A stretch of DNA of 38,324 bases, taken from assembly GCA_002269645.1 (NCBI GenBank), contig NIVC01004679.1, positions 1-38,324 of the forward strand, read 5' to 3'. Of the stretch, positions 161 to 35,857 are shown one piece after another (positions within the stretch are counted from its first letter, which is position 1; each line of letters opens with the position of its first letter). The notes below the pieces were generated by a model. The model was not told the DNA's origin. It ran no database searches and worked only from the letters and a program-made list of their open reading frames with translations. The translations under genes were made by a program, and so were the position numbers. This stretch comes from Macrostomum lignano (taxonomy: Eukaryota).

Positions 161-3100
161 CTTGAATCCTTGCAGCTCGTCCTGGATGGCGTTCAGCCGG
201 CGGTCCTGCTCCTCCAGGCTGAGCTGCCGGCCGCTGGAGCAGATGCTGGACACGCCGTCCAGCCGCTGCTCGATCCAGGGCCGGCCACGTTGGCCAGGTC
301 GGCGAACTGCCGACGCAGGCGCTCGTTCTGGTGCTGCCGGGCCACCTCCTGCTGCAGGCTCTGGTCGCGGGCGGGCACCCGAGCGGAGACTTCGTCCCAC
401 TTCATCGCCAGCTCCTGTGGGCGGCGTATGAGGGCATCGCTGAATTGCTGATAGCCTGGGTCCAGAGTGCTAGGTTGGGACTGGGATCGATTAGTTTTAG
501 GACTGGGATTTATTAGTTTTGGGACTGGGATCGATTAGTTTTGGGACTTGGATCGATTAGTTTTGGGACTGGGATGGATTATTTTTGGGTCTTGGATCGA
601 TTAGTTTTGGGACTGGGATTTATTAGTTTTGGGACTGGGATCGATTAGTTTTGGAACTGGGATTTATTAGTTTTGGGACTGGGATCGATTACGAGTAGTT
701 TTGGGACTGGACCAATTAGTTTTATAACTAAGGGAAAACAATGTTATAGATGAAAATAACAGCAATATCTGCACTGCGCCACTGGCAGTAGCATGATTGG
801 GAGTAAAAGCTAAAACTTTCTTTGCTTACTTTTAAAGTTAAAACTGGAAAGGCTGTTACAATTTAAAACAAATGAGCAGGAGAGAACAAGAGCGCAGTAA
901 TTGGCGTTGCGCCACGATCCCTCCCCCCCACAGCTCTGCTCTCTCGCCCAGTCCAGCTGGCTCTCAGTCAGGGTTATCGAATTTCAAGCAGGCCAGTCTG
1001 CATTCGCGCCCCCAGACCCCCGCCCGCGGTCCGGCACGACAAGGCCTGGACGGGAGACACCCTCACGGGATGGGCGGTGGGCGGCTCCGTCACGCCCGGT
1101 TTCAAGGTGAACCAAGGAGTCCTTGAAACTAGGAGTCTGGAGTGCCAACTCTGCTGTACTGCGAGGCTACAGCAGTCTTCTGTAAAAACTGAAGCCCTGC
1201 CGTCTGCCTTGTCCAGCCTCCTGGCTCAGGATCTCCCTGAACCCCCTCAACCGCCTCCATCCGCTGTACGCAGCCGAGCCGCAGAAATGCCGAGCTTTGG
1301 CCGCAAAGAAATCTTCAAACTGGCTGGGGGTCACTGCAGCGGCCAGAGGGAGGGAGGCACCACACAGACAGGCTGTAGAGGCTGGGCGGCCCCATCCCCA
1401 CCCCCTGGATTGATTTCCCGCGCCCTGCCTCCGCCGTTCGCACTGAAGCGGCTGGGGGAGGGGGGGGGCTGGCCGAGCGGGCAATTCGCAAATGGCAAGG
1501 GGAAAAATGCGGCCAGGGGTGGCTGGGGATTCTGCATTGCAGCGGCAGCAAGGGGCTGCACCGTAACAGACACAGAACTGAACTGAACGCCGCTTGCCAA
1601 ATGGCAGAGTGGAGGGTGGGGCGCAGACACAAAAGCCGCAGTTCGAGGCTCCGAAGGCTGCAAGCAAAAGTGCAGCGGCCGCATCCGGCATCCGCTCCCT
1701 GGATTGATTGCCGCCGGCGCAAAGGTGCAACAGGCGGAGGCTTGGAAGATGTCAGCAGGCGGGAGTCGGGGGGGGGGGCGCAGGCTGGCCGTCCTCAACC
1801 ACAGGCGTGTGCCGTTCCCAGCCTGTTAAAACTCGAATACAGAAATCCTGCAGCTTGCTAAGCTAAACAAGCAATCCAATTATCCGGTTTGTGAAAATTC
1901 GCATTACATGACTCATAGGAGCTCGCATGAATCACTTCTGCTTCCGTAATGTCGTGACTTGCATGACCCATTAAATATGCATGACCCAATCTTTTTCGAA
2001 TAGCATGACCCTTTGATCCTGAATGACCCAACTAGCATGACCCATTGATCCTGTATGACCCAACCTAGCATGACCCATTGATCCTGCATGACCCAACCCA
2101 GCATGACCCATTGATCCTGCATGACCCATTGATCCTGCATGACCCAACCTAGCATGACCCATTGATCCTGCATGACCCAACCCAGCATGACCCACCCGGC
2201 CCCGCGGCTCACCCTGGCAGTCAGTCCGGTGTACGGGTTGATCAGCGCGTCGCCGGAAAGGCCGTGGGCGGCGGCCAGCTCGCGCACCTCGGCGTCGATA
2301 TGGGCGATGGCGCGGTGCTCGGCCTCGGCAGCCGGCAGGCTGGCCCGGAACTCCGAGTGGGCGGCCTGCAGCGAGTCCACCTCCTGCACCGAGTACACGA
2401 TGAAGAAGTCCATCAGGTCCTCGTTCGCTCCGTCCAGCCAGTTGTTGAACGGGGCCGCCCGCTTGGCGAACTGCAGGTGCAGCTGGTCCAGCGACTCCAG
2501 CACCTGCTCCGCCTCGCGCAGGGCCCGCGACCTGCGACAGCGGACCGGGCTCGACTTCAGGTCCTCCGCTGCCCTCCTGACCTCCGCTACCCTCCTGACC
2601 TCCGCTACCCTCCTGACCTCCGCTACCCTCCTGAACTCCGCTGCCCTCTTGACCTCCGCTGCCCTCCTGACCTCCGCTACCCTCCTGACCTCCGCTACCC
2701 TCCTGACCTCCGCTGCCCTCCTGACCTCCGCTGCCCCCCTGACCTCCGCTGCCCTCCTGACCTCCGCTGCCCCCCTGACCTCCGCTGCCCCCCTGACCTC
2801 CGCTGCCCTCCTGACCTCCGTTGCCCTCCTGACCTCCGTTGCCCTCCTGAATGAATCCAGCTGGCCTCACCTGGTGGTGCTGAGGACTCCCAGGCGGTCC
2901 CAGGCTCCGCAGATGGCCTGGCAGCGAGAGTTCACGGAGTCCAGGTCATGGTAGCCCAGGCTGTTCAGGTCCTCGGCAATCTTGCAGATCTGCTCCACCC
3001 GCTCCTGGTGAGCGCCGAGGTCGGCCTCGAAAGCCACCTGCTTGTTCATCATGGCTTTGAGGTCGTTCAGCTTGCACGATTTAAAGTCCTGCGACTGCTG

Positions 3101-6100
3101 CTGCGCCTCCTTGCCCTCCATCCAGGCCTCGTGGTTGCCGCACTTCAGCACGAACTTCTTGTACAGATTCTCCAGCCTGCGAACGGGTGAGTCAGGAGCT
3201 ATGCTTACTGCATTGAGGATATTCTCAACTGTGCAACAGCCACCGCCCCAATCTCACCTGTGCAACACCCGCCACCCCATTCTCACCTGTGCAACACCCA
3301 CCATCCCATTCTCACCTGTGCAACACCCACCACCCCAATATCACCTGTGCAACACCCACCACCCCAATATCACCTGTGCAACACCCACCACCCCAATATC
3401 ACCTGTGCAACACCCACCACCCCAATCTCACCTGTGCAACACCCGCCACCCCATTCTCACCTGTGCAACACCCACCACCCCAATCTCACCTGTGCAACAC
3501 CCGCCACCCCATTCTCACCTGTGCAACAACCACCACCCCAATATCACCTGTGCAACACCCACCACCTCAATCTCACCTGTGCAACACCCACCACCTCAAT
3601 CTCACCTGTGCAACACCCACCACCTCAATCTCACCTGTGCAACACCCACCACCTCAATCTCACCTGTGCAACACCCACCACCTCAATCTCACCTGTGCAA
3701 CACCCGCCACCCCATTCTCACCTGTGCAACACCCGCCACCCCAATCTCACCTGTGCAACACCCGCCACCCCAATCTCACCTGTGCAACAACCACCACCCC
3801 AATATCACCTGTGCAACACCCGCCACCCCAATCTCACCTGTGCAACACCCGCCACCCCAATCTCACCTGTGCAACACCCACCACCTCAATCTCACCTGTG
3901 CAACACCCACCACCTCAATCTCACCTGTGCAACACCCGCCACCTCAATCTCACCTGTGCAACACCCACCACCTCAATCTCACCTGTGCAACACCCACCAC
4001 CTCAATCTCACCTGTGCAACACCCGCCACCTCAATCTCACCTGTGCAACACCCACCACCTCAATCTCACCTGTGCAACACCCACCACCTCAATCTCACCT
4101 GTGCAACACCCGCCACCTCAATCTCACCTGTGCAACACCCACCACCCCAATCTCACCTGTGCAACACCCGCCACCCCAATCTCACCTGTGCAGCCGCTGC
4201 ATCTCCGCCAGCATCCACTCCTCGAATCCTTTCTCGGCCTTCTCCAGCCCCTTCCAGGCGTTGGCGATGTCGGAGACCAGCTTGCCCTCGGTGGGCAGGT
4301 AGGCGGGCCGGTTGCTGAGGCGCAGTCGAGTCTGCAAGGTGTTGAAGGTGGTCTCCAGCAGGGCCTTCTCCTCCAGCTTGGGCGGCTTCTCAGCCCGGCG
4401 ATAGTCTCGAAACTGGTTGAGGCGGTCGCGAACGCCGTCCAGGGTGTTGTCGGTGCTGCGGTCCTCCAGGATCGGGCGGGTCCGCTTGATCCAGGCTAGC
4501 AGGTCGCTGGCCAGGCGCTCGTAGAGGTCCATGAGCTTCTCGTTCTCCTGGTTGACGCGGAGCACCTTGCAGATCCGGTTGGCGGCGGTCTCCGCCTTCT
4601 GGGCGCCCGAGAAGGCGTGGTAGTAGGCGGACACGTAGGTCATCACGGACCGCTCGTCCGGCTTCACGTTGTTCACCATGTCTGCGGGGCGTGATGCCAG
4701 TGTACAGGTGTGATGCCAGTGTACAGGTGTGATGCCTGTGTACAGGTGTGATGCCAGTGTACAGGTGTGATGCCAGTGTACAGGTGTGATGCCAGTGTAC
4801 AGGTGTGATGCCAGTGTACAGGTGTGATGCCAGTGTACAGGTGTGATGCCTGTGTACAGGTGTGATGCCAGTGTACAGGTGTGATGCCAGTGTACAGGTG
4901 TGATGCCAGTGTACAGGTGTGATGCCAGTGTACAGGTGTGATGCCACTGTACAGACAAGATTGGAAGCATAGAAATCCTATGTATAGATGAGAGGACATT
5001 ATGGGCTGCACTCAGATCCCAGCGCTCACCTTCGGGATCTAACATCCTGGGAATGTCCAGGTGCTTCTCGGCCACATCGAAAGCGAGGTTCAGGTTTTCC
5101 AGCGGGTTGTCCTGCAGTTTTTACAGCGTCGGCGAGCATTTGAGGCTGGCTAATATAAAGCAATAAAACTGCTTTGCACTCATTCAAGGCAGCCCGCTTG
5201 AGAATTTTATGGCTGCTATAAAAGTGGTTAGTAGAAACACCAGACAGCAGGCATGAGTACAGGCAGGGAGGTGGCAGGCAGGCAACTCACTTTGCTCAGC
5301 TTGTCATAGTCGATGAGCTCCGGCCTGTGCCTGTGGATCAGCGCACAGAATGCCAGGCCGTCCTGAAAGCTGCAAGAGTAGAAAAGGGGGTCCCGGCAGC
5401 TGCAGGGGTTCGGAACGGCATGCGGTGCTGGGAGGCAAATGTGAGTAGCTGAACAACAGGAATGCCCGAAATCTGCTGCAATCCCTATCTACAGACACTG
5501 TAATCCCTGTCTACAGACACTGTAATCCTTATCTACAGACAGTGTAATCCATATCTACAGACAGTGCAATACCTATCTACAGGCACTTTAATTAATCCTT
5601 ATCTACAGACACTGTAATCCCTATCTACACACACTGCAGTCTCTATCTACAGACACTGCAGTCTCTATCTACAGACACTGTAATCTCTATCTGCAGACAC
5701 TGTAATCTCTATCTGCAGACACGGTAATCTCTATCTACAGACACTGTAATCTCTATCTACAGACACTGTAATCCCTATCTACAAACACTGCAGTCTCTAT
5801 CTACACACACTGCAGTCTCTATCTACAGACACTGTAATCCCTATCTACACACACTGCAGTCTCTATCTACACACACTGCAGTCTCTATCTACAGACACTG
5901 TAATCCCTATCTACACACACTGCAGTCTCTATCTACACACACTGCAGTCTCTATCTACAGACACTGTAATCTCTATCTGCAGACACTGTAATCTCTATCT
6001 ACAGACACTGTAATCTCTATCTACAGACACTGTAATCCCTATCTACAGACACTGTAATCCCTACCTACAGACACTGTAATCCCTACCTACAGACACTGTA

Positions 6101-9100
6101 ATCCCTATCTACAGACACTGTAATCTTTATCTACAGACAGTGTAATCCATATCTACAGACAGTGCAATACCTATCTACAGGCACTTTAATTAATCCTTAT
6201 CTACAGACACTGTAATCCCTATCTACACACACTGCAGTCTCTATCTACAGACACTGTAATCCCTATCTACAGACACTGTAATCTCTATCTACAGACACTG
6301 TAATCCCTATCTACAGACACTGTAATCCCTGTCTACAGACACTGTAATCCCTGTCTACAGACACTGTAACCCTTATCTACAGACAGTGTAATCCATATCT
6401 ACAGACAGTGCAATACCTATCTACAGGCACTTTAATTAATCCTTATCTACAGACACTGTAATCCCTATCTACACACACTGCAGTCTCTATCTACAGACAC
6501 TGTAATCCCAATCTACAGACACTGTAATCCCTGTCTAGACACTGCACCACCCCACCCAGCAGGATTGCAGCAGAATCAGGTGACAGAACAGCAACGTCAG
6601 CAAGCAGCTCATGCGGTGAGAAGGCAAGCGACAATGCATTGAACAGCAGAGGTCAGTCGGCATGCCCTGCAGGCGAGCGCACTGACTGACCCTTGAGAGC
6701 TTCGAATAGTCGAGCAGCTCCGGCCTGTGCCGGTGGATGAGCGCGCAGAAGGCCAGGCCGTCCTTCCAGCTGCGATCGAGTTGCGCAACAGGTGGACGGA
6801 GCGCGTTGGGATTCCGAAATTGATGCTGAGCTCTCCCAGATCCCCTAATCCCAATTTAGCACAGAGCGCCCCTTGCCCAGCCAGCTCACCTCATGTGAAA
6901 GTTCTGCACGTTCACGTTCTTGTAGGGAGCGGTCTTGCGCTGGCACCACAGCAGGAGGCCCTCCTTGGCGGTCATCTCTGCGTTTGGCGGCGTGGTTTAA
7001 AGTACAACTGCACTAATATTGACAACCAGTAAAATTCTGACTTACCTTCAACGGTGATGTCCTGGATGGCGAAGCGGAGGATGATCGTCCAGATCATGCC
7101 CAGCGTCATCTTCACGTTGCCGTCAACGATTTCTGAAATTCCAGTTTTAAGCCACGAGATAAATGACCGCGAGCCTTCTAGAGGGACCAGATTCTCCACG
7201 GCGCCAGACACTCGTATCTAGAGGCGCCAGACACTCGTATCTAGAGGCGCCAAATACTCGTATCCAGAGGCGCCAGACACTCGTATCTAGAGGCGCCAGG
7301 CACTCGTATCTAGAGGCGCCAGACACTCGTATCTAGAGGCACCAGAATCTCTTTTACAGAAGCGCCAGACACTCGTATCTAGAGGCGCCAAATACTCGTA
7401 TCTAGAGGCACCAGACTCTCTTTTACAGAAGCGCCAGACACTCGTATCTAGAGGCGCCAAATACTCGTATCTAGAGGCACCAGACTCTCTTTTACAGAAG
7501 CGCCAGACACCCACCCAGAGGCGCCAGACACGTATCTAGAGGCGCCAGACACTTGTATCTAGAGGCGCCAAATACTCGTATCTAGAGGCACCAGACTCTC
7601 TTTTACAGAGGCGCCAGACACACTCACCCAGAGGCGCGAGATACTTTCATCAAGAGGCGCCAGACACTCACCCAGAGGCGCGAGATACTTTCATCAAGAG
7701 GCGCCAGACGCTCACCCAGAGGCACCCGACACTCGTATCTAGAGGCACCAAATACTCGTATCAAGAGGCACCAGACTCTCTTTTACAGAGGCGCCAGACA
7801 CACTCACCCAGAGGCGCGAGATACTTTCATCAAGAGGCGCCAGACACTCACCCACAAGCGCCAGATACTCGTACCCAGGGGCGCCAGACACTCATTTAGA
7901 GGCGCCAGATACTCGTATGCAGAGACGACAGACACTCATCCAGAGGCGCCAGATACTCGTATCAAGAGACGCCAGGCACTCTCACCCAGAGGCGCCAGGC
8001 ACTCTCATCCAGAGGCGCCAAAAACTCCAAACCTCCCCACCAAAGCGCCACTCACCCTCGGCGCCAATGGACACGAGCTGCACGCCCTTGCGCTCGATGA
8101 ACTCCAGCGCCTTGTTAACATTGTTAATCTTGTGAAAGCGCATCCGGCCCCGCTCTGGCTTGGGCAAAGCCTCGCTCGAAATCACCTCCAGCAGCAGCAT
8201 GAGCTTCAAGCCGGAGCACAGGTCCTGGGTGATGTCCTCGATGGATGTGTCAGCTTTGCGCAGGAAGGAATTGATCCAGGCTGTGAATGTCTGTGCATGT
8301 GCAAAACAGTTTGTTCAACATTAATGGAAGGTTTGTAATGGAAGACAAAATCTTTGATATTGAAATTACAAGCTATATTGGATGGTTAAATATATATAGA
8401 TATTGAAGATTAAATATTGATACATTTTAAAATCAGATTATATACAAGACTATCATTAATCTTATACAAGAAGTAACTAAACAAAAGGAATATGAGCTAT
8501 ATGAAAAAATTCAAAAATATTTTTCAATCATAGATTAATTAAAGATTGAATAAGATACATAGCTTAGTATTAAATTTTTGAGAGCAAAATAAAATTATTT
8601 ATTATTATAAAAAGGATCATCATCTTTAAAAATCTTTATTGCTATTTTATTTTTATAATAATTTCATCCTTGAGTTTAAAGCAAAGTTGTACATTCACTA
8701 GCATAATGGAATATTAAATGTTTAGTACATATGCATATCATTGTTACATTAAGATAGTGATAAAGAGCATACTTACTATATATAAATACATATATAACAA
8801 TGAGAAAAGATGAAGATGGGATAGTGCAAATTACAAATCTAAATAAATAGAAAATATTTTAGCTTTAACTACTAAGTTAGTTTTCTACATATTAGAGTTT
8901 ATTACCCTAAGCACAAAAAACTTAAATCATATGCCTAAGTTGGTCATTTCTGCAGTCAAAGGATAATATGCAACTAAAGCCAAAGGACAATAAACTACCA
9001 AGTCTAATTTGATAGTTGATTATAGACTAGTGATATCATTAGTCTTTTGATTATTTTTTATCACAAAAGAAACAACCGTCTTTCAAATTTAGTAGGAGAA

Positions 9101-9445: not shown

Positions 9446-9802
9446 ACTTAAAGATGACAAACTAAGTATGCCGAACTGAACCAAATATCCGAGATGCAGT
9501 GGATGATGGATTCAGGAAGAAAAATTGACTGAACTTTTTCATTCAAATATAATTGTGGATGTTAATAAAAAGCAGTGAAACAAATGCACAACAACAGTTA
9601 GTTATTTGTCGTATGCAGCATTTTAAATTAAAAAAGAATACTAAAATTTTATTTTTTAAACCTTCTCAACTTGAAAGCTTTTATTTCTAAATTTCATTTT
9701 GTGCGTCTCTGGTAAATTCAGTTTGTGAAACTACCATCTATTTTTAGTGAATCACAATTTCATGAGGTCGTAAAGCGTGATTTAGACGATCCAAATGACG
9801 AT
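9446..9802. promoter_or_regulatory. Putative bidirectional promoter/5' UTR region between alpha-actinin and vasohibin
   Basis: The two inferred start codons (9445 on -, 9803 on +) diverge with about 357 bp between them inside an AT-rich island. No specific motif was identified. Confidence 0.5.
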
Positions 9803-13908: not shown

Positions 13909-14638
13909 TCAGAAAATCTGCCTGCCGTACGCGACCACCTCGCACAGGGTCAGGCCTTCGATCGGCAGGTCCACCTGCACCGTCCGGCCCACCCGGCCGC
14001 AGCTGAACTTCTTCACAGAGAAGCTGCTCGGCTCGAAGTAGGACGCGAACTCGACGCCATTGAGGCTGATGATGAAGTTGTTAAGCCTCTGAGAGCAGCA
14101 GTCTACCCGGTTGTACAGGGCCACGCGGTCGATGTACGCCCGCTGCGGCAGACTGGCCCGCCACCAGGCGTTCCTGGCGGAGCTCGTGTGGGTGCAGGAG
14201 CCGGCAGAGAAGTGCTGGTTGGTGCTGCCGTCGATGGCCAGGCCGCACGGGCCGCCAAAGCCGGTGTCGACCTGCTGGCAGCTGGAGAACAGCAGCCGCT
14301 CCTCCACTGCATGAGTTGTTTGCGTGGGTCCAGTCAGAGCTTTGAGCTCGGCAATGAAAGGCGTGAGTCCAGTCAGAGCTTTGAGCTCGGCAATATAGGG
14401 CGTGAGTCCAGTCAGAGCTTTGAGCTCGGCAATGAAAGGCGTGAGTCCAGTCAGAGCTTTGAGCTCGGCAATATAGGGCGTGAGTCCAGTCAGAGCTTTG
14501 AGCTCGGCAATGAAAGGCGTGAGTCCAGTCAGAGCTTTGAGCTCGGCAATGAAAGCACAGGTGCGAGAGACTCACCCGACTCCTTTGCGAACAGGCTGCT
14601 GGGGCAGTCGGCGGTGGCTGCCGCTTCCACTGCCAGCA
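13909..14638 (-). CDS. F-type (fucose-binding) lectin, FTP domain; intact terminal exon 14306-13909 and a short or degenerate upstream exon ending at 14576
   Basis: VEERLLFSSCQQVDTGFGGPCGLAIDGSTNQHFSAGSCTHT...WWRASL...YNRVDCCSQRL...LTLCEVVAYG. The canonical H-x26-R-x-D-x4-R fucose motif counts out exactly, and the AIDG motif is present. The upstream exon (..ADCPSSLFAKESG|gtgagt) splices in phase 1; its 5' limit is uncertain (ATG ~14638, or a frameshifted PAN-like remnant). Confidence 0.8.
14322..14553. repeat. 39-bp minisatellite in the F-type lectin intron
   Basis: About six copies of gcgtgagtccagtcagagctttgagctcggcaat(gaaag/atagg), in two alternating variants. Confidence 0.95.
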
Positions 14639-15073
14639 TTTTTGGTGCAGAATACTTGGCACTGCTGTGCGCTGCTTAAATAACGCTGAGCCTCCACCTG
14701 GTAGCTGCGATCTTCCAATCAGAAAGGGACTCGTTCAAAATACTATCCCAAAAATGATTTGCGACTGTAGCTGACAATCCACTCCACGCGGCTTTTCTCA
14801 TACTACTTGCGACGGACTTGAAAGTAGCTGAATTGATTGCGACAAGCTATTTTTGCTGCCGCTCACGCGGCTAAGCGGGCAACTGTAAACTGATTTAAGG
14901 AGTAGGCGATGGGGGAAGCAATTAAAAAGGGAACGCCAGAGGCTTAGATGAAATGAATGGAAGAAAGCGGGCCTCTCCGGTGGATCTTCTTCTGACGGCC
15001 GCTGCGGCTGCCTCTGTGGGACTGGGCGGCTGGCAGCCTCAGCTTCTTGCGACCCGCAACTTGCGCTCCGGGA

Positions 15074-15399
15074 GTGGACTTCCACAGCTGGTGCGGCAGG
15101 GCCATGGATGGCGTTACCAACCAGGACTTCTTCAGCGGCTACTGCACTCACACCAGCCCCAATATCAACAGCTGGTGGCGGGCCAGCCTGCCACAGCGGG
15201 CGTAAATCGACCGCGTGGCCCTGTACAACCGGGTAGACTGCTGCTCTCAGAGTTCGCGTCCCACTTCGAGCCGAGCAGCTTCTCTGCGAAGAAGTTCAGC
15301 TGCGGCCGGGTGGGCTGGACGGTGCAGGTGGACCTGCATGAAAGCCTGGAGGCTCTGACCCTGTGCGAGGTGGTCGTGTACGGCAGGTGGTTCTCTTGA
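15074..15399 (+). pseudogene. Inverted F-type lectin pseudogene
   Basis: Aligns to the 13909-14306 exon. In-frame TAA at 15203-15205 (TAC in the paralog) and a 37-bp deletion at ~15252 with GAG microhomology that shifts the frame. Confidence 0.85.
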
Positions 15400-18773: not shown

Positions 18774-19024
18774 CTGCGGTGATGGCTGCCAGGGACATCC
18801 TTGCCAAATTAATAGTTAATCTGCACTACTTGTATTCAGTAGCAAAATGCGGTCATTGAATCTACCTGAGTGCCGCGCATTTGGGTGTGAAACGAACTTT
18901 AGGTACAGCCTATTTTTCTAATCAAGAGCCACCAGCCGTTAGCCATGACTCCTGAATTTTGAGTTAACTGGTCCTAACCACTGAGCTGGGGCCTTACCTG
19001 TGGCCTTGCACGTTCGAATTTCCG

Positions 19025-20990
19025 TCTTCTTGTTTCTTGTTGTGCCTTTTCCTCTTCTTTCATCTTGTGTCTTCTTGTGTCTTCTTGTGCCCTCTTGTGT
19101 CTATTTGTGTCTTTTCTGTCTTCTTGTGTCTTCTCGTGTCTTCTTGTACCTTCTTTTGTCTTCTTGTGTCTTCTTGTGTCTTCTTGTGCCCTCTTGTGTC
19201 TATTTGTGTCTTTTCTGTCTTCTTGTGTCTTCTCGTGTCTTCTTGTACCTTCTTTTGTCTTCTTGTGTCTTCTTGTGTCTTCTTGTGCCCTCTTGTGTCT
19301 ATTTGTGTCTTTTCTGTCTTCTTGTGTCTTCTCGTGTCTTCTTGTACCTTCTTTTGTCTTCTTGTGTCTTCTCGTGTCTTCTTGTGCCCTCTTGTGTCTA
19401 TTTGTGTCTTTTCTGTCTTCTTGTGTCTTCTCGTGTCTTCTTGTACCTTCTTTTGTCTTCTTGTGTCTTCTTGTGTCTTCTTGTGCCCTCTTGTGTCTAT
19501 TTGTGTCTTTTCTGTCTTCTTGTGTCTTCTCGTGTCTTCTTGTACCTTATTTTGTCTTCTTGTTTCTTCGTATGTCTTATTGTGTCTTCTTTGTGCCTCT
19601 TTGTGCCTTCTTGTGTCTTCGTATGTCTTATTGTGTCTTCTTCTTTTATCTTGTGTCTTCTTGTGTCTTCTTGTGCCCTCCTGTGTCTAGTTGTGTCTTT
19701 TCTGTCTTCTTGTGTCTCTTTGTGCCTTCTTTTGTCTTCTTGTGTCTTCTTGTGTCTTCTTGTGCCCTCTTGTGTCTATTTGTGTCTTTTCTGTCTTCTT
19801 GTGTCTTCTCGTGTCTTCTTGTACCTTCTTTTGTCTTCTTGTGTCTTCTTGTGTCTTCTTGTGCCCTCTTGTGTCTATTTGTGTCTTTTCTGTCTTCTTG
19901 TGTCTTCTCGTGTCTTCTTGTACCTTCTTTTGTCTTCTTGTGTCTTCTTGTGTCTTCTTGTGCCCTCTTGTGTCTATTTGTGTCTTTTCTGTCTTCTTGT
20001 GTCTTCTCGTGTCTTCTTGTACCTTATTTTGTCTTCTTGTTTCTTCGTATGTCTTATTGTGTCTTCTTTGTGCCTCTTTGTGCCTTCTTGTGTCTTCGTA
20101 TGTCTTATTGTGTCTTCTTCTTTTATCTTGTGTCTTCTTGTGTCTTCTTGTGCCCTCCTGTGTCTAGTTGTGTCTTTTCTGTCTTCTTGTGTCTCTTTGT
20201 GCCTTCTTTTGTCTTCTTGTGTCTTCTTGTGTCTTCTTGTGCCCTCTTGTGTCTATTTGTGTCTTTTCTGTCTTCTTGTGTCTTCTCGTGTCTTCTTGTA
20301 CCTTCTTTTGTCTTCTTGTGTCTTCTTGTGTCTTCTTGTGCCCTCTTGTGTCTATTTGTGTCTTTTCTGTCTTCTTGTGTCTTCTCGTGTCTTCTTGTAC
20401 CTTCTTTTGTCTTCTTGTGTCTTCTTGTGTCTTCTTGTGCCCTCTTGTGTCTATTTGTGTCTTTTCTGTCTTCTTGTGTCTTCTCGTGTCTTCTTGTACC
20501 TTATTTTGTCTTCTTGTTTCTTCGTATGTCTTATTGTGTCTTCTTTGTGCCTCTTTGTGCCTTCTTGTGTCTTCGTATGTCTTATTGTGTCTTCTTCTTT
20601 TATCTTGTGTCTTCTTGTGTCTTCTTGTGCCCTCCTGTGTCTAGTTGTGTCTTTTCTGTCTTCTTGTGTCTCTTTGTGCCTTCTTGTGTCTTCTTGTTTC
20701 TTCTTGTACCTTTTTGTGTCTTCTTGTGTCTCTTTGTACCTTCTGTGTCTTCTTGTGCCTCTTTGTGCTTTCTTGTGTCTTCTTGTGTGTCCTTGTGCCT
20801 TCTTGTTTCTTCTTGTGTCTTCTTGTTTCTTCTTGTGTCTTTTTGTTTCTTCTTGTGTCTTCGCTTATCTTTTTGTGTCTTCTTGTGTCTCTTTGTACCT
20901 ACTTGTGTTTTTTATGTGGTCGAGCGTCTTCGTGTGTTTTCTTGTACCTTTTTGTGTCTTTGCGTTTTCTTGTCTACTTGTGGAACTGCA
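19025..20990. repeat. Hierarchical pyrimidine-rich satellite (10-bp TCTTCTTGTG, ~99-bp unit, 477-bp higher-order unit)
   Basis: ORFs 19691-20167 and 20168-20644 translate identically; a 33-residue (99-bp) subunit repeats within them. Confidence 0.95.
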
Positions 20991-22018: not shown

Positions 22019-23778
22019 ATGCCAGCTAAGAAACATCTGAGCACTGAAGTGGCAGCAGCCATACTGTTCTTCGCCAGTTTCTTCGGAGGACAGACTGAAG
22101 GTGAGCTCATGCGAAGGGCTGGAGCAGCGGTAGGGAACAGCGGGAGGGAACAGCGGTAAGGAACAGCGGGAGGGAACAGCGGGAGGGAACAGCGGGAGGG
22201 AACAGCGGGTGGGAACAGCGGGAGGGAACAGCGGGAGGGAACAGCGGGAGGGAACAGCGGGAGGGAACAGCGGGAGGGAACAGCGGGAGGGAACAGCGGG
22301 AGGGAACAGCGGGAGGAAACAGCGGGAGGGAACAGCGGGAGGGAACAGCGGGAGGGAACAGCGGGAGGGAACAGCGGGAGGGAACAGCGGGAGGGAACAG
22401 CGGGAGGGAACAGCCGGAGGGAACAGCGCGAGGGAACAGCGCGAGGGAACAGCGGGAGGGAACAGCGGGAGGGAACAGCGGGAGGGAACAGCGGGAGGGA
22501 ACAGTGGGAGGGAACAGTGGGAGGGAACAGCGGGAGGGAACAGCGGGAGGGAACAGCGGGAGGGAACAGCGGGAGGGAACAGCCGGAGGGAACAGCGGGA
22601 GGGAACAGCGGGAGGGAACAGCGGGAGGGAACAGCGGGAGGGAACAGCCGGAGGGAACAGCGGGAGGGAACAGCGGGAGGGAACAGCAGGAGGGAACAGC
22701 GGGAGGGAACAGCGGGAGGGAACAGCGGGAGGGAACAGCGGGAGGGAACAGCAGGAGGGAACAGCGGGAGGGAACAGCGGGAGGGAACAGTGGGAGGGAA
22801 CAGTGGGAGGGAACAGCGGGAGGGAACAGCGGGAGGGAACAGCGGGAAAGCAGATGCAACAGCAAAAAGCATATGGAAACAGCCATGCATGAAAAACCGA
22901 AAGCAATTTCAGCACCGAGAAGCTGCCTCAACTTGTAGCAGAAAATTTTCTAATTACTGAACTTTCATCTGTTTTAATGCATTTATTTGGTCTGAGCCGT
23001 GTCCAGAAATGATGGCATGCAAATTTCGCGATCGACCCTCGTCTCGGGCCAAATAGTTTTGGAGTGGCCATCAAGTTCACTGTGTCCTTGTCACTGGGCA
23101 GGCAGGAATTTCAGCCTCTGTAATTAAACCAAACACACTCGCCTCTTCATCTGTCGCAAGAGGTGTTTTGATGGCAGCATCCCGCAGATCGTTCAGGTTT
23201 TCTGTCCAGGCTCTGTTTCTAGGGCTCCTTGGATTAGCTGAGCCAAAATGCAGCCATAGAACCGCGTCCGCGCATATCCCTACCGCACTACTAGTTTGTC
23301 AGTAGAAATATCAGTAGACATGTCAGTAGAAATATCAGTAGACATGTCAGTAGAAATATCAGTAGACATGTCAGTAGAAATATCAGGAGAAGTGTGAGTA
23401 AAAATGTCAGTAGAAGTGTCAGTAGACATTTTAGCAGAAATGTCAGTACAAATGTCAGCAGAGATGCCGGAACTCGCCCCGCAGAGGCCGCTGTGCAGTC
23501 ACTGGTGGTGTGCGAGAAGTCAGCGGCTGAGCTGAGCTGCCTGGCGGGCGCCATCCAGACGGAGTTCGCCATGTTCGGCAAGTCGGACGAGTTCAGCACG
23601 GCCTGCACCAGGACAACCAGCAGCCTGAACAACTGCTGGAGCCCGAACTCCCTGAGCTTCGTGCGGGCGCAGTGCGACGCTCGGCAGAGCTGCAGCTTCG
23701 TGGCCAGCAACGACAACTTCGGCGGCGACCCGTGCCCTGGCAACTACAAGTACCTGTTCGCCAACTACACCTGCCAAG
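22019..23778 (+). CDS. Secreted SUEL-type (Gal/rhamnose-binding) lectin: signal-peptide exon 22019-22100 plus SUEL exon 23485-23778; 3' exon(s) not identified
   Basis: Exon 1 MPAKKHLSTEVAAAILFFASFFGGQTE G|gtgagc has a basic n-region and hydrophobic core, phase 1. Exon 2 is 294 nt, phase 1-1: VCEKSAAELSC..GAIQTEFAMFGK..C......CWSPNSLSFVRAQCDARQSCSFVASNDNFGGDPCPGNYKYLFANYTC, the classic SUEL FG-DPC-G--KYL---Y-C signature. The SUEL exon is well supported; its link to exon 1 is inferred. Confidence 0.75.
22130..22848. repeat. 13-bp minisatellite (gggagggaacagc) in SUEL gene intron 1
   Basis: About 55 copies; explains six overlapping artefact ORFs. Confidence 0.95.
23295..23462. repeat. 12-bp minisatellite (gtcagtaga(a/c)at) upstream of the SUEL exon; inverted counterpart at ~27690-27835
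   Basis: Tandem copies are visible at both SUEL copies. Confidence 0.9.
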
Positions 23779-24029
23779 GTGAGGCAGCAGCTTGATTGAT
23801 TGACAGGAGGTGAATCACTCGGACAGGTTTGTCATCCGGTAAGTTCCGCTTCACTGCCAGCTTCTGCCCGGTGCCTTTTGAGCAGAAATGAAAATACATG
23901 AGCAGATTTAGTTGGAACTTTTACTTCGAAACTGAATGCTCTTTGAATTCCTCATTTCCTCATTCGAATATTAAATACCTCATTTTTAATACGAGCGTGT
24001 TTGAGAAAGCCATAGCGCTAATTGTCATT

Positions 24030-24330: not shown

Positions 24331-24939
24331 ATCAACATGAGAAGGGGCTCATCTATATTAGTGGATAATTATCATTCTCATGATAATTCTCAGTACAGAA
24401 ATCGACCTGCCCAGCTCAGGTAACAAAAAGATCCCTAACGACTTTCTCGATCAGGTCTGAGTTCGGCAGAGAGGCGGGGCTGAAATGCATCCCCTAAAGA
24501 AAGGGTAAAATATCCCCAAGCCGCTGAATTTTGAATGACAGCTCAGGATCGAAAACAGCAGGCTCAGCCTTATGCTTCCCGCGGCAGCGCCGGAGGGCGG
24601 GAGAGACAAACAAGACAGCCGCGTCTGCGGGAAGACAGCACGGGAAGACTCGAGAGTACGGGAAAAGCGCGCTAAAACTCCAGGCAAAGAAGAGGGTGGG
24701 ACAACTTCCCTCAGCCGATATCTTGCTGCTTCTTCTCCCCCCCGTCTCTACTGTGGCTCTCGTCTCCGGCGCGCCTCCCCGCTGGCAGCCAATGAGGGGC
24801 TGAGCAGGGAGGCTCAAAAACACAGCCAGCAACTGGCCGGGCCGGCCACTGCCTGCCTCCGGCTCGCTAATTGCGGCGGCGGATGAAGATAAGCAAGAAT
24901 TGATTGAGGCCGCGCCAACTGCTAATTTGGACCGGCGCC

Positions 24940-35857
<10,918 letters not shown>

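What the first reader, a model, noticed from the sequence alone, without database searches (positions are those of the whole stretch)
5291..6769. Tandem duplicated, probably mutually exclusive CH2 exons in alpha-actinin
Seen: two 79-nt exons with identical phases and intact GT-AG sites encode [27 protein letters not shown] and [27 protein letters not shown]. By hand there are about six synonymous codon changes and five mostly conservative replacements, which suggests both are under selection. Including both or neither shifts the frame. Established: the well-known vertebrate ACTN mutually exclusive exons are the next-but-one exon (8a/8b) and the EF-hand exon, and the reported PIP2-binding peptide TAPY.NVN.QNFH.SWK ends at the swapped residues. 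Inference: a tissue-specific WK/FQ switch that may alter lipid regulation or actin binding.
Basis: partly seen in the sequence, partly recalled or inferred. Interest (0 to 1): 0.7.

Follow-up and report, generated by a model that had tools for sequence, protein, structure and literature searches.

The report
Alternative exon pair in flatworm alpha-actinin
The flatworm Macrostomum lignano's alpha-actinin gene holds two tandem 79-base versions of one exon, used one at a time. The same pair occurs in molluscs, annelids and a bryozoan, so it is a real, ancient splicing switch that automated annotation already captures.

Summary
On the minus strand, exons 6769-6691 (5A, SWKDG…SKLSR) and 5369-5291 (5B, SFQDG…DKLSK) are both 79 nt. 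They have the same phase and intact AG/GT sites, and 61/79 nt are identical. Seven codons differ synonymously and five change the residue. Including both or neither gives a premature stop.

The window is Macrostomum lignano alpha-actinin. Deposited gene models built from RNA-seq already use one exon each: PAA47452.1 uses 5A and PAA93892.1 uses 5B.

The same tandem pair, 79 nt each, sits at the same place in Biomphalaria (mollusc), Ridgeia and Capitella (annelids) and Watersipora (bryozoan). RefSeq isoforms X1 and X2 of Ostrea and Ruditapes differ only in this exon. The upstream copy ends in R in every species compared. The downstream copy always has F and nearly always ends in K. The pair is absent from Limulus, an insect-like contig and a monogenean.

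So this is a conserved lophotrochozoan pair of mutually exclusive exons. It is separate from the known exon 8a/8b and 19a/19b pairs. Four of six literature searches targeted such a pair and found no description, although annotation holds it.

Tissue specificity and any effect on PIP2 or actin binding remain untested. The K-to-Q change is specific to Macrostomum.

The parts
6890..6977 (-). Constitutive exon 4 of alpha-actinin. It encodes (E)[29 protein letters not shown] plus the first two bases (AG) of the Ser codon. It carries most of the mapped PIP2 peptide.
   Evidence: Single copy in the window; duplicated in Ridgeia and Watersipora.
6691..6769 (-). Exon 5A, the upstream alternative (79 nt). 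It encodes (S)[26 protein letters not shown]. Its pyrimidine tract is weak (10 of 18 bases) and its donor is gtcagt.
   Evidence: Used in PAA47452.1, PAA52094.1 and Logan transcript L006. Closest to the upstream W…R copies of molluscs and the bryozoan.
5370..6690 (-). Intron between the two alternatives (1321 nt). Most of it is a 22-nt minisatellite (5476-6544, about 48 copies), bracketed by a perfect 13-nt inverted repeat (5472-5484 and 6562-6574).
5291..5369 (-). Exon 5B, the downstream alternative (79 nt). It encodes (S)[26 protein letters not shown]. Its pyrimidine tract is strong (16 of 18 bases) and its donor is the consensus gtgagt.
   Evidence: Used in PAA93892.1 and three UniRef M. 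lignano models. Closest to the downstream F…K copies of the oyster and Capitella.
5030..5111 (-). Constitutive exon 6. It encodes [27 protein letters not shown] plus one base, and joins to either 5A or 5B.
4186..4681 (-). Exon 7. It begins with the equivalent of vertebrate and fly exon 8 ([29 protein letters not shown]), fused to the neck and first spectrin repeat. It is single copy here.

Best explanation
The window carries the alpha-actinin gene of Macrostomum lignano on the minus strand. It runs from exon 1 near 9447 and off the window start after exon 10.

Exons 5A and 5B are an old tandem duplication of the 79-nt exon that encodes the second helix of the CH2 domain and the loop after it (human ACTN2 residues 179-205). 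The spliceosome joins exon 4 to one of them and that one to exon 6. Because 79 is not a multiple of three, transcripts with both or neither carry an early stop. Such transcripts would make no functional protein and would probably be removed by nonsense-mediated decay.

The result is two full-length alpha-actinins that differ at five residues in Macrostomum. Two differences recur across phyla. One is W or F at ACTN2 position 180, the end of the mapped PIP2 peptide. The other is R or K at position 205.

The pair most likely arose once, before flatworms, molluscs, annelids and bryozoans diverged. Both versions have been kept since, which points to two isoforms with different regulation of the actin-binding domain.

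**Shown here:** the exon anatomy, the frame consequences, one-at-a-time use in transcript-derived models, presence in four phyla, and purifying selection on both copies.

**Inferred:** decay of the aberrant products by nonsense-mediated decay, a regulated (cell-type or stage-specific) choice, a single origin, and any biochemical difference between the isoforms.
For: **Anatomy and frame**
- Exon coordinates, splice sites and frame consequences.

**Identity of the gene and organism**
- The 90% cluster of the 98%-identical transcript P0239 holds M. lignano PAA47452.1, PAA93892.1, PAA52094.1 and three UniRef entries.
- The window is 98-99% identical to GCA_002269645.1 contig NIVC01003302.1.

**One exon per transcript**
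- PAA47452.1 and PAA52094.1 carry 5A. PAA93892.1 carries 5B.
- The GenBank annotation was made purely from RNA-seq and transcriptome assemblies (PMC5730564).
- Logan transcript L006 carries 5A only.

**Both exons intact elsewhere in M. lignano**
- Locus g1 (L007) has 5A identical and 5B with one synonymous change.
- Locus g3 (L011) also holds both.

**Same pair in other phyla, each 79 nt with AG/GT**
- Biomphalaria L005: 31250-31330 and 32622-32702.
- Ridgeia L004: 23701-23781 and 24625-24705.
- Capitella L009: 7042-7122 and 7424-7504.
- Watersipora L008: 19585-19665 and 20716-20796.

**Isoforms that differ only here**
- Ostrea edulis X1 and X2, Ruditapes philippinarum X1 and X2, and two Sinanodonta products differ only in this exon.
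- Independent Logan mRNA-sized contigs carry each type: P0248 versus P0269 and P0279, and P0313 versus P0266.

**Orthology signal**
- Macrostomum 5A differs from the oyster W…R exon at 1 residue and from the oyster F…K exon at 4. Macrostomum 5B differs at 2 and 5 respectively.
- Position 27 is R in 10 of 10 first copies and K in 9 of 10 second copies. Position 2 is W in 8 of 10 first copies and F in 10 of 10 second copies.

**Selection**
- Between phyla, 11-18 synonymous versus 1-7 replacement codon differences out of 26.
Against: - No read-level junction counts could be made, so relative use, tissue specificity and the frequency of 5A+5B or skipped products are unknown.
- In M. lignano the 5A and 5B models come from different near-identical gene copies (g5 and g3 versus g1). 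RNA-seq reads cannot be assigned among copies that are 93-99% identical even in introns. Switching within a single locus is therefore shown only indirectly, by the mollusc isoforms.
- The single-origin argument rests on about three informative positions in 27 residues. The label-swap test cannot give better than 1 in 8.
- Annelids have F in both copies and the bryozoan has R in both. Gene conversion or independent change has therefore occurred.
- The replacements are conservative, and the PIP2 arginine inside the exon (R192) is invariant. A large functional difference is not obvious.
- For Ostrea, Ruditapes, Gigantopelta and Sinanodonta the genomic order of the two exons was not checked. They were typed from proteins only.
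Confidence: 0.8

Rival explanations
1. Copy-specific constitutive use. M. lignano carries several near-identical alpha-actinin loci because of its recent genome duplication. Each locus would always use the same one of the two exons, so there would be no regulated switch within a gene in this species.
For: The 5A models come from g5 and g3 and the 5B model from g1. The assembly has extensive redundancy of at least 95% identity (PMC5730564).
Against: All three loci examined keep both exons with intact splice sites and nearly identical flanking introns, so no cis difference explains a fixed choice. UniRef model A0A1I8GKP4 combines the g5-type sequence with 5B. In molluscs, a single gene yields both isoforms.
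Confidence: 0.1
2. Recurrent independent duplication. The 79-nt exon would have duplicated separately in flatworms, molluscs, annelids and bryozoans, and the shared W/F and R/K pattern would be convergence.
For: Only about three positions carry signal. Annelids are F/F and the bryozoan is R/R. The neighbouring exon 4 is duplicated in only some lineages, so tandem exon duplication does recur in this gene. Within M. lignano dS between 5A and 5B is 0.72, lower than the saturated values in other species.
Against: The exon, the order (R-type first where genomic DNA was read), the length and the phase are the same in four phyla. Macrostomum and oyster exons are reciprocal nearest matches: 1 and 2 differences within type, 4 and 5 across types. 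The pair is absent from the ecdysozoan loci examined, which fits one origin on the lophotrochozoan stem. The low dS in M. lignano can be explained by its strong GC-rich codon bias.
Confidence: 0.12
3. One copy is a decaying or unused pseudo-exon, or an artefact of assembly.
For: None beyond the a priori possibility. The window does carry at least one assembly-type indel elsewhere in the gene.
Against: Both copies have open frames and canonical splice sites. Both appear in transcript-derived proteins. Both are intact in three M. lignano loci. Both are conserved at the protein level across phyla while silent sites are saturated.
Confidence: 0.03

Closest known systems
ACTN exon 8a/8b mutually exclusive pair (vertebrate ACTN2 and ACTN4, Drosophila Actn, C. 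elegans atn-1)
   Same: Same gene family and same domain (CH2 of the actin-binding domain). Same mechanism: tandem duplicated homologous exons spliced one at a time. The literature proposes that it tunes actin binding by tissue (PMC4494069; PMC4550062).
   Different: It is a different exon. The 8a/8b pair encodes the last CH2 helix (D..N..KPDE..YVS.YYHAF), two exons downstream. That exon is single copy in the window and in all five lophotrochozoan loci, and double in the arthropod-like contig L001. The pair studied here encodes ACTN2 residues 179-205.
ACTN exon 19a/19b (EF-hand) mutually exclusive pair of chordates
   Same: A tandem homologous exon pair in alpha-actinin that yields isoforms with different regulation (calcium sensitivity).
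   Different: It lies in the C-terminal calmodulin-like domain and is reported to be chordate-specific. That part of the gene is outside the window. The M. lignano 5A and 5B products are identical there.
RefSeq alpha-actinin isoforms X1/X2 of molluscs (Ostrea edulis, Ruditapes philippinarum, Gigantopelta aegis, Haliotis species, Mytilus species)
   Same: The same exon and the same two types (SWKDG…LSR versus SFKDG…LSK). The isoforms differ only there. These are the orthologues of 5A and 5B.
   Different: They exist only as automated annotation. I found no paper that describes or names the pair. Molluscs have K, not Q, at the third residue of the F-type exon.
Tandem exon-duplication substitutions in general (for example tropomyosin and MAPK8 exon 6a/6b, as catalogued in PMC4494069 and PMC8373072)
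   Same: Equal length, equal phase, homologous sequence, frame-breaking if both or neither is included, and deep conservation of both copies.
   Different: None in kind. This is one more instance, restricted to the lophotrochozoan species sampled.

Membership tests
Alpha-actinin (spectrin superfamily) | N-terminal actin-binding domain made of two CH domains | tested here: met
   Pfam CH at 124 and 122 bits for CH2 with either exon. E = 1.9e-130 to human ACTN2 structures 7ANK and 4D1E over the whole actin-binding domain.
Alpha-actinin (spectrin superfamily) | Spectrin-repeat rod followed by C-terminal EF-hands | tested here: met
   The rod exons are in the window. The full-length M. lignano products of this gene carry Spectrin, EF-hand and EFhand_Ca_insen hits. 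The EF-hand exons themselves lie outside the window.
Mutually exclusive exon pair from tandem exon duplication | Adjacent homologous exons of the same length and phase, each with its own splice sites | tested here: met
   79 nt each, 77% identical, AG/GT at both, no exon between them.
Mutually exclusive exon pair from tandem exon duplication | Including both or neither destroys the reading frame | tested here: met
   In-silico joins give a stop in 5B (both included) or in exon 6 (neither included).
Mutually exclusive exon pair from tandem exon duplication | Mature transcripts contain exactly one of the two, and each is used | tested here: met
   RNA-seq-derived M. lignano models carry 5A or 5B, never both. 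Logan transcript L006 carries 5A. Mollusc X1/X2 isoforms and independent Logan mRNAs carry one type each. No read-level counts were possible.
Mutually exclusive exon pair from tandem exon duplication | Regulated (tissue- or stage-specific) choice | not testable with these tools
   No access to read alignments, single-cell data or in situ data.
ACTN exon 8a/8b pair | The duplicated exon is the one encoding the last CH2 helix (…KPDE…YVS.YYHAF…) | tested here: not met
   That segment occurs once in the window (4681-4595 region) and once in each lophotrochozoan locus. The duplicated exon here encodes SWKDG…LS(R/K), two exons upstream.

The most novel reading that the evidence does not exclude
Lophotrochozoans would regulate the alpha-actinin actin-binding domain through their own splicing switch, more than 500 million years old. 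It sits in the first part of CH2, at the edge of the PIP2 platform (W/F180, R/K205), and in some lineages is joined by a second duplicated exon that encodes the PIP2 peptide itself. This switch would stand in for the exon 8a/8b switch that flies, nematodes and vertebrates use, which is single copy in every lophotrochozoan locus examined. The two isoforms would differ in lipid or neck/calmodulin-like-domain regulation and would mark different contractile cell types, such as muscle versus non-muscle or fast versus catch muscle.
Probability: 0.25. Interest if true: 0.55.

Novelty: new member of a known kind. Interest (0 to 1): 0.4.

Why it matters
Alpha-actinin is a textbook case of deeply conserved mutually exclusive exons. 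The literature I could search recognises two pairs, 8a/8b and 19a/19b. This is a third pair at a different place in the actin-binding domain.

It is kept in at least four lophotrochozoan phyla, while the classic 8a/8b pair appears as a single exon in those same loci. That makes it a clean natural experiment: which surface of CH2 does evolution alter to tune an actin cross-linker?

M. lignano has transgenesis and RNAi, and molluscs offer separable muscle types, so the idea is directly testable.

The biology is incremental rather than surprising. Automated annotation already holds both isoforms, and the residue differences are conservative.

Tried and rejected
- **First protein search (CH2 only).** It returned no same-species hit, because the tool lists only proteins up to about 1.75 times the query length. 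It did show that W and F both occur at this position across animals.
- **'FQDG' exons with intron read-through (P0055, P0079, P0081).** I suspected they were second copies in arthropods. The contig L001 showed a single exon fused to exon 6, so this was rejected.
- **A 640-aa query with the poly-E N-terminus.** It timed out. Dropping the low-complexity start fixed it.
- **M. lignano paralogues as a test of selection.** Introns are 89-99% identical between copies, so the comparison carries no information.
- **A docking-site/selector RNA structure.** I looked for one that could enforce exclusivity. The only notable pairing is a 13-nt perfect inverted repeat bracketing the minisatellite. It would bring 5A's donor and 5B's acceptor together, which does not explain exclusion, and its conservation could not be tested. 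It is not claimed as a mechanism.
- **Lek et al. 2010** (gene structure and splicing of alpha-actinins). The paper is not held in the library.
- **Lineus longissimus locus.** It was not on record.
- **Tubulanus model P0240.** It is a mis-joined model with a duplicated actin-binding domain and was not used.
- **Formal orthology test.** With four phyla it cannot give better than 1 in 8, so it is reported as descriptive only.
Full report
**1. What is in the sequence**

The gene lies on the minus strand.

- Exon 4 (6977-6890) ends with …NFHM plus AG.
- Exon 5A (6769-6691) and exon 5B (5369-5291) are each 79 nt. Each is preceded by AG and followed by GT.
- Exon 6 starts at 5111.
- The copies share 61 of 79 bases. 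Of the 26 complete codons, 7 differ synonymously and 5 change the residue: W/F, K/Q, L/I, S/D and R/K. NG86 gives dN 0.19 and dS 0.72.
- Joining exon 4 to 5A or to 5B and then to exon 6 keeps the frame. Joining both gives a stop inside 5B. Skipping both gives a stop in exon 6.
- With either exon the segment scores as a full Pfam CH domain, at 124 and 122 bits.
- The 1321-nt intron between the copies is mostly a 22-nt minisatellite of about 48 units.
- 5B has the better splice signals: 16 of 18 pyrimidines upstream and a gtgagt donor. 5A has 10 of 18 and gtcagt.

**2. What gene and what organism**

Translated segments and a guide transcript define ten alpha-actinin exons from about 9447 down to the window start.

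A 662-aa query found a Logan transcript (P0239) at 98% identity. Its 90% cluster holds Macrostomum lignano proteins PAA47452.1, PAA93892.1 and PAA52094.1, plus three UniRef entries. Their N-terminus and diagnostic residues match the window exactly.

The window aligns at 98-99% to contig NIVC01003302.1 of assembly GCA_002269645.1. The many small gaps indicate the same locus in another assembly version or allele.

**3. Are both exons used, one at a time?**

- PAA47452.1 (locus g5) and PAA52094.1 (g3) contain 5A.
- PAA93892.1 (g1) and three UniRef models contain 5B.
- None contains both.
- The GenBank annotation of this assembly was produced only from RNA-seq-guided and de novo transcript assemblies (StringTie, TACO, TransDecoder; PMC5730564). 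Both exons therefore occur in assembled transcripts.
- The Logan transcript L006 carries 5A only.
- All three M. lignano loci I could read keep both exons. In g1, 5A is identical and 5B has one synonymous change. In g3, both are identical.

There is a caveat. The copies are too alike, with introns 89-99% identical, to assign reads to loci or to test selection within the species.

**4. The pair is not special to this flatworm**

I searched genomic loci of relatives with the exon peptides. Two 79-nt copies with AG/GT, between single copies of exons 3 and 6, were found in the following:

| Species | Group | Locus | Copy 1 | Copy 2 |
|---|---|---|---|---|
| Biomphalaria glabrata | gastropod | L005 | 31250-31330 | 32622-32702 |
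| Ridgeia piscesae | annelid | L004 | 23701-23781 | 24625-24705 |
| Capitella teleta | annelid | L009 | 7042-7122 | 7424-7504 |
| Watersipora subatra | bryozoan | L008 | 19585-19665 | 20716-20796 |

Further evidence from proteins:

- A Nucella lapillus model reads straight through both copies.
- RefSeq isoforms of one gene differ only in this exon in Ostrea edulis (X1 versus X2), Ruditapes philippinarum (X1 versus X2) and Sinanodonta woodiana. In Gigantopelta aegis they differ here plus a rod micro-exon.
- mRNA-sized Logan contigs independently carry each type.

A single copy is present in Limulus (L010), in an insect-like contig (L001, where it is fused to exon 6), and in the monogenean Cichlidogyrus (L003, where the whole region has no introns). 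In vertebrates, intron read-through fragments show the same exon boundaries. The published catalogues list only the 8a/8b and 19a/19b pairs.

**5. One origin or several?**

Across ten species, position 27 of the exon is R in 10 of 10 first copies and K in 9 of 10 second copies. Position 2 is W in 8 of 10 first copies and F in 10 of 10 second copies.

Macrostomum 5A is one residue from the oyster W…R exon and four from the oyster F…K exon. 5B is two residues from the F…K exon and five from the W…R exon.

Labelling by genomic order gives the highest type-consistency score in 10 of 12 one-per-phylum combinations. With four phyla, however, the best possible rank is only 1 in 8, so this is descriptive.

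Annelids (F in both copies) and the bryozoan (R in both) show later homogenisation or parallel change. I favour a single duplication on the lophotrochozoan stem, with about 0.12 for recurrent origin.

Between phyla both copies show 11-18 synonymous against 1-7 replacement codon differences, with silent sites saturated. Both are therefore under long-term purifying selection.

**6. How it most likely works**

*Shown.* There are two interchangeable 79-nt cassettes. Any product other than one cassette breaks the frame. Each cassette occurs alone in transcript models.

*Inferred from general knowledge of such pairs.* Products with both or neither are removed by nonsense-mediated decay, and the choice is regulated by trans-acting factors. 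I found no convincing competing RNA structure. The only notable pairing is a 13-nt inverted repeat around the minisatellite.

*Structural mapping.* By alignment to human ACTN2, the exon covers S179-K205. This is the start of the second CH2 helix through the following loop.

- The PIP2 site was mapped to residues 165-181, plus the arginine platform R163, R169 and R192 (PMC4259493).
- The cassette therefore swaps the last two residues of the mapped peptide (W180, K181) in Macrostomum.
- Only W180/F and K205/R are recurrent across phyla. K181Q is Macrostomum-specific and R192 is invariant.

A modest change in CH2 stability, lipid docking or the nearby neck/calmodulin-like-domain contact is plausible but untested.

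**7. Comparison with known systems, and novelty**

This works like the ACTN 8a/8b pair but is not that pair. The 8-type exon (…KPDE…YYHAF…) is single copy in the window and in all five lophotrochozoan loci, and double in the arthropod-like contig.

Four of the six literature searches targeted alpha-actinin splicing or exon pairs. The other two concerned the M. lignano annotation and the PIP2 site. None returned a description of a CH2 pair at this exon. The most relevant paper, Lek et al. 2010, is not held, so prior description cannot be excluded.

The isoforms are already present in RefSeq and GenBank annotation. I therefore rate this a new member of a known kind: real, conserved, apparently undescribed in print, but unsurprising in mechanism.

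**8. Verdict**

- The structural interpretation (tandem, mutually exclusive CH2 exons) is supported.
- The functional interpretation (a tissue-specific lipid or actin switch) is untested.
- The implied novelty is reduced, because the pair is widespread and already annotated in lophotrochozoans.
- Interest is 0.4.

Noticed in passing
window 3223-4192 (minus strand; exon 7 ends at 4186): A 29-nt minisatellite of about 33 copies starts 6-7 nt inside alpha-actinin exon 7. Each unit therefore recreates the exon end plus the 5' splice site (GCACAG|GTGAGA), giving about 33 candidate donors in tandem. Using any but the first would add multiples of 29 nt.
   Followed up: partly
window 475-691, 2001-2194, 2563-2850, 4691-4954, 5476-6544, 7200-8027: Nearly every intron of the alpha-actinin gene longer than about 200 nt is made up mostly of its own distinct minisatellite, with periods of 18-33 nt (one also scored at 84 nt) and about 2-48 copies. 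This fits the roughly 15% tandem-repeat content reported for M. lignano.
   Followed up: no
window 5472-5484 and 6562-6574: A perfect 13-nt inverted repeat (TCTGCTGCAATCC / GGATTGCAGCAGA) brackets the minisatellite between exons 5A and 5B. About 0.03 such pairs are expected by chance in 1.95 kb. It could be a stem that loops out the repeat, or the terminal repeats of an inserted element.
   Followed up: partly
window about 275-283 (minus strand, exon 10): There is a one-base frame break between …NVAGP and WIEQRLDG…. The window reads GCCGGCCCTGG, whereas contig NIVC01003302.1 reads GCCGGGCCCTGG and the deposited proteins are in frame. This is most likely a homopolymer-length error in the assembly rather than a pseudogene.
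   Followed up: yes
L004 21714-21797 and 21869-21955 (Ridgeia); L008 16420-16506 and 16778-16861 (Watersipora): The preceding exon (exon 4, which encodes the TAPY…NFH PIP2 peptide) is also duplicated in tandem in an annelid and a bryozoan. In Ridgeia only about 70 nt separate the copies. It is not duplicated in M. lignano, Biomphalaria or Capitella. This may be a second mutually exclusive pair.
   Followed up: partly
window 4595-4681; L004, L005, L008, L009 versus L001: The exon that is duplicated in flies and vertebrates (8a/8b type) is single copy in all five lophotrochozoan loci examined, although the literature dates that pair to the bilaterian ancestor. The arthropod-like contig L001 has two copies (4476-4562 and 5183-5269).
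   Followed up: partly
window 13912-14330 (-) and 14926-15396 (+): One exon encodes an F5/8-type-C / NedA-like galactose-binding lectin domain (Pfam E = 5e-12). A similar segment (…FEPSSFSAKKFSCGRVGWTVQVDL…CEVVVYG) lies on the opposite strand about 600 nt away, forming an inverted pair.
   Followed up: partly
window 23295-23792 (+) and 27361-27870 (-): Two nearly identical exons encode a SUEL-type (rhamnose/galactose-binding) lectin domain (Pfam E = 3e-18). They lie in inverted orientation about 3.6 kb apart. Each is preceded by a 12-nt repeat that translates as (SRNV)n.
   Followed up: partly
window about 35469-35831 (+): An exon encodes a C2 domain (Pfam E = 5e-8), so another gene lies at the far end of the window.
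   Followed up: no
window 19024-20973: A 2-kb array is built from a 10-nt unit (GTCTTCTTGT) arranged in higher-order 99-nt and 477-nt periods. The plus strand is almost free of A (AT skew -0.9).
   Followed up: no
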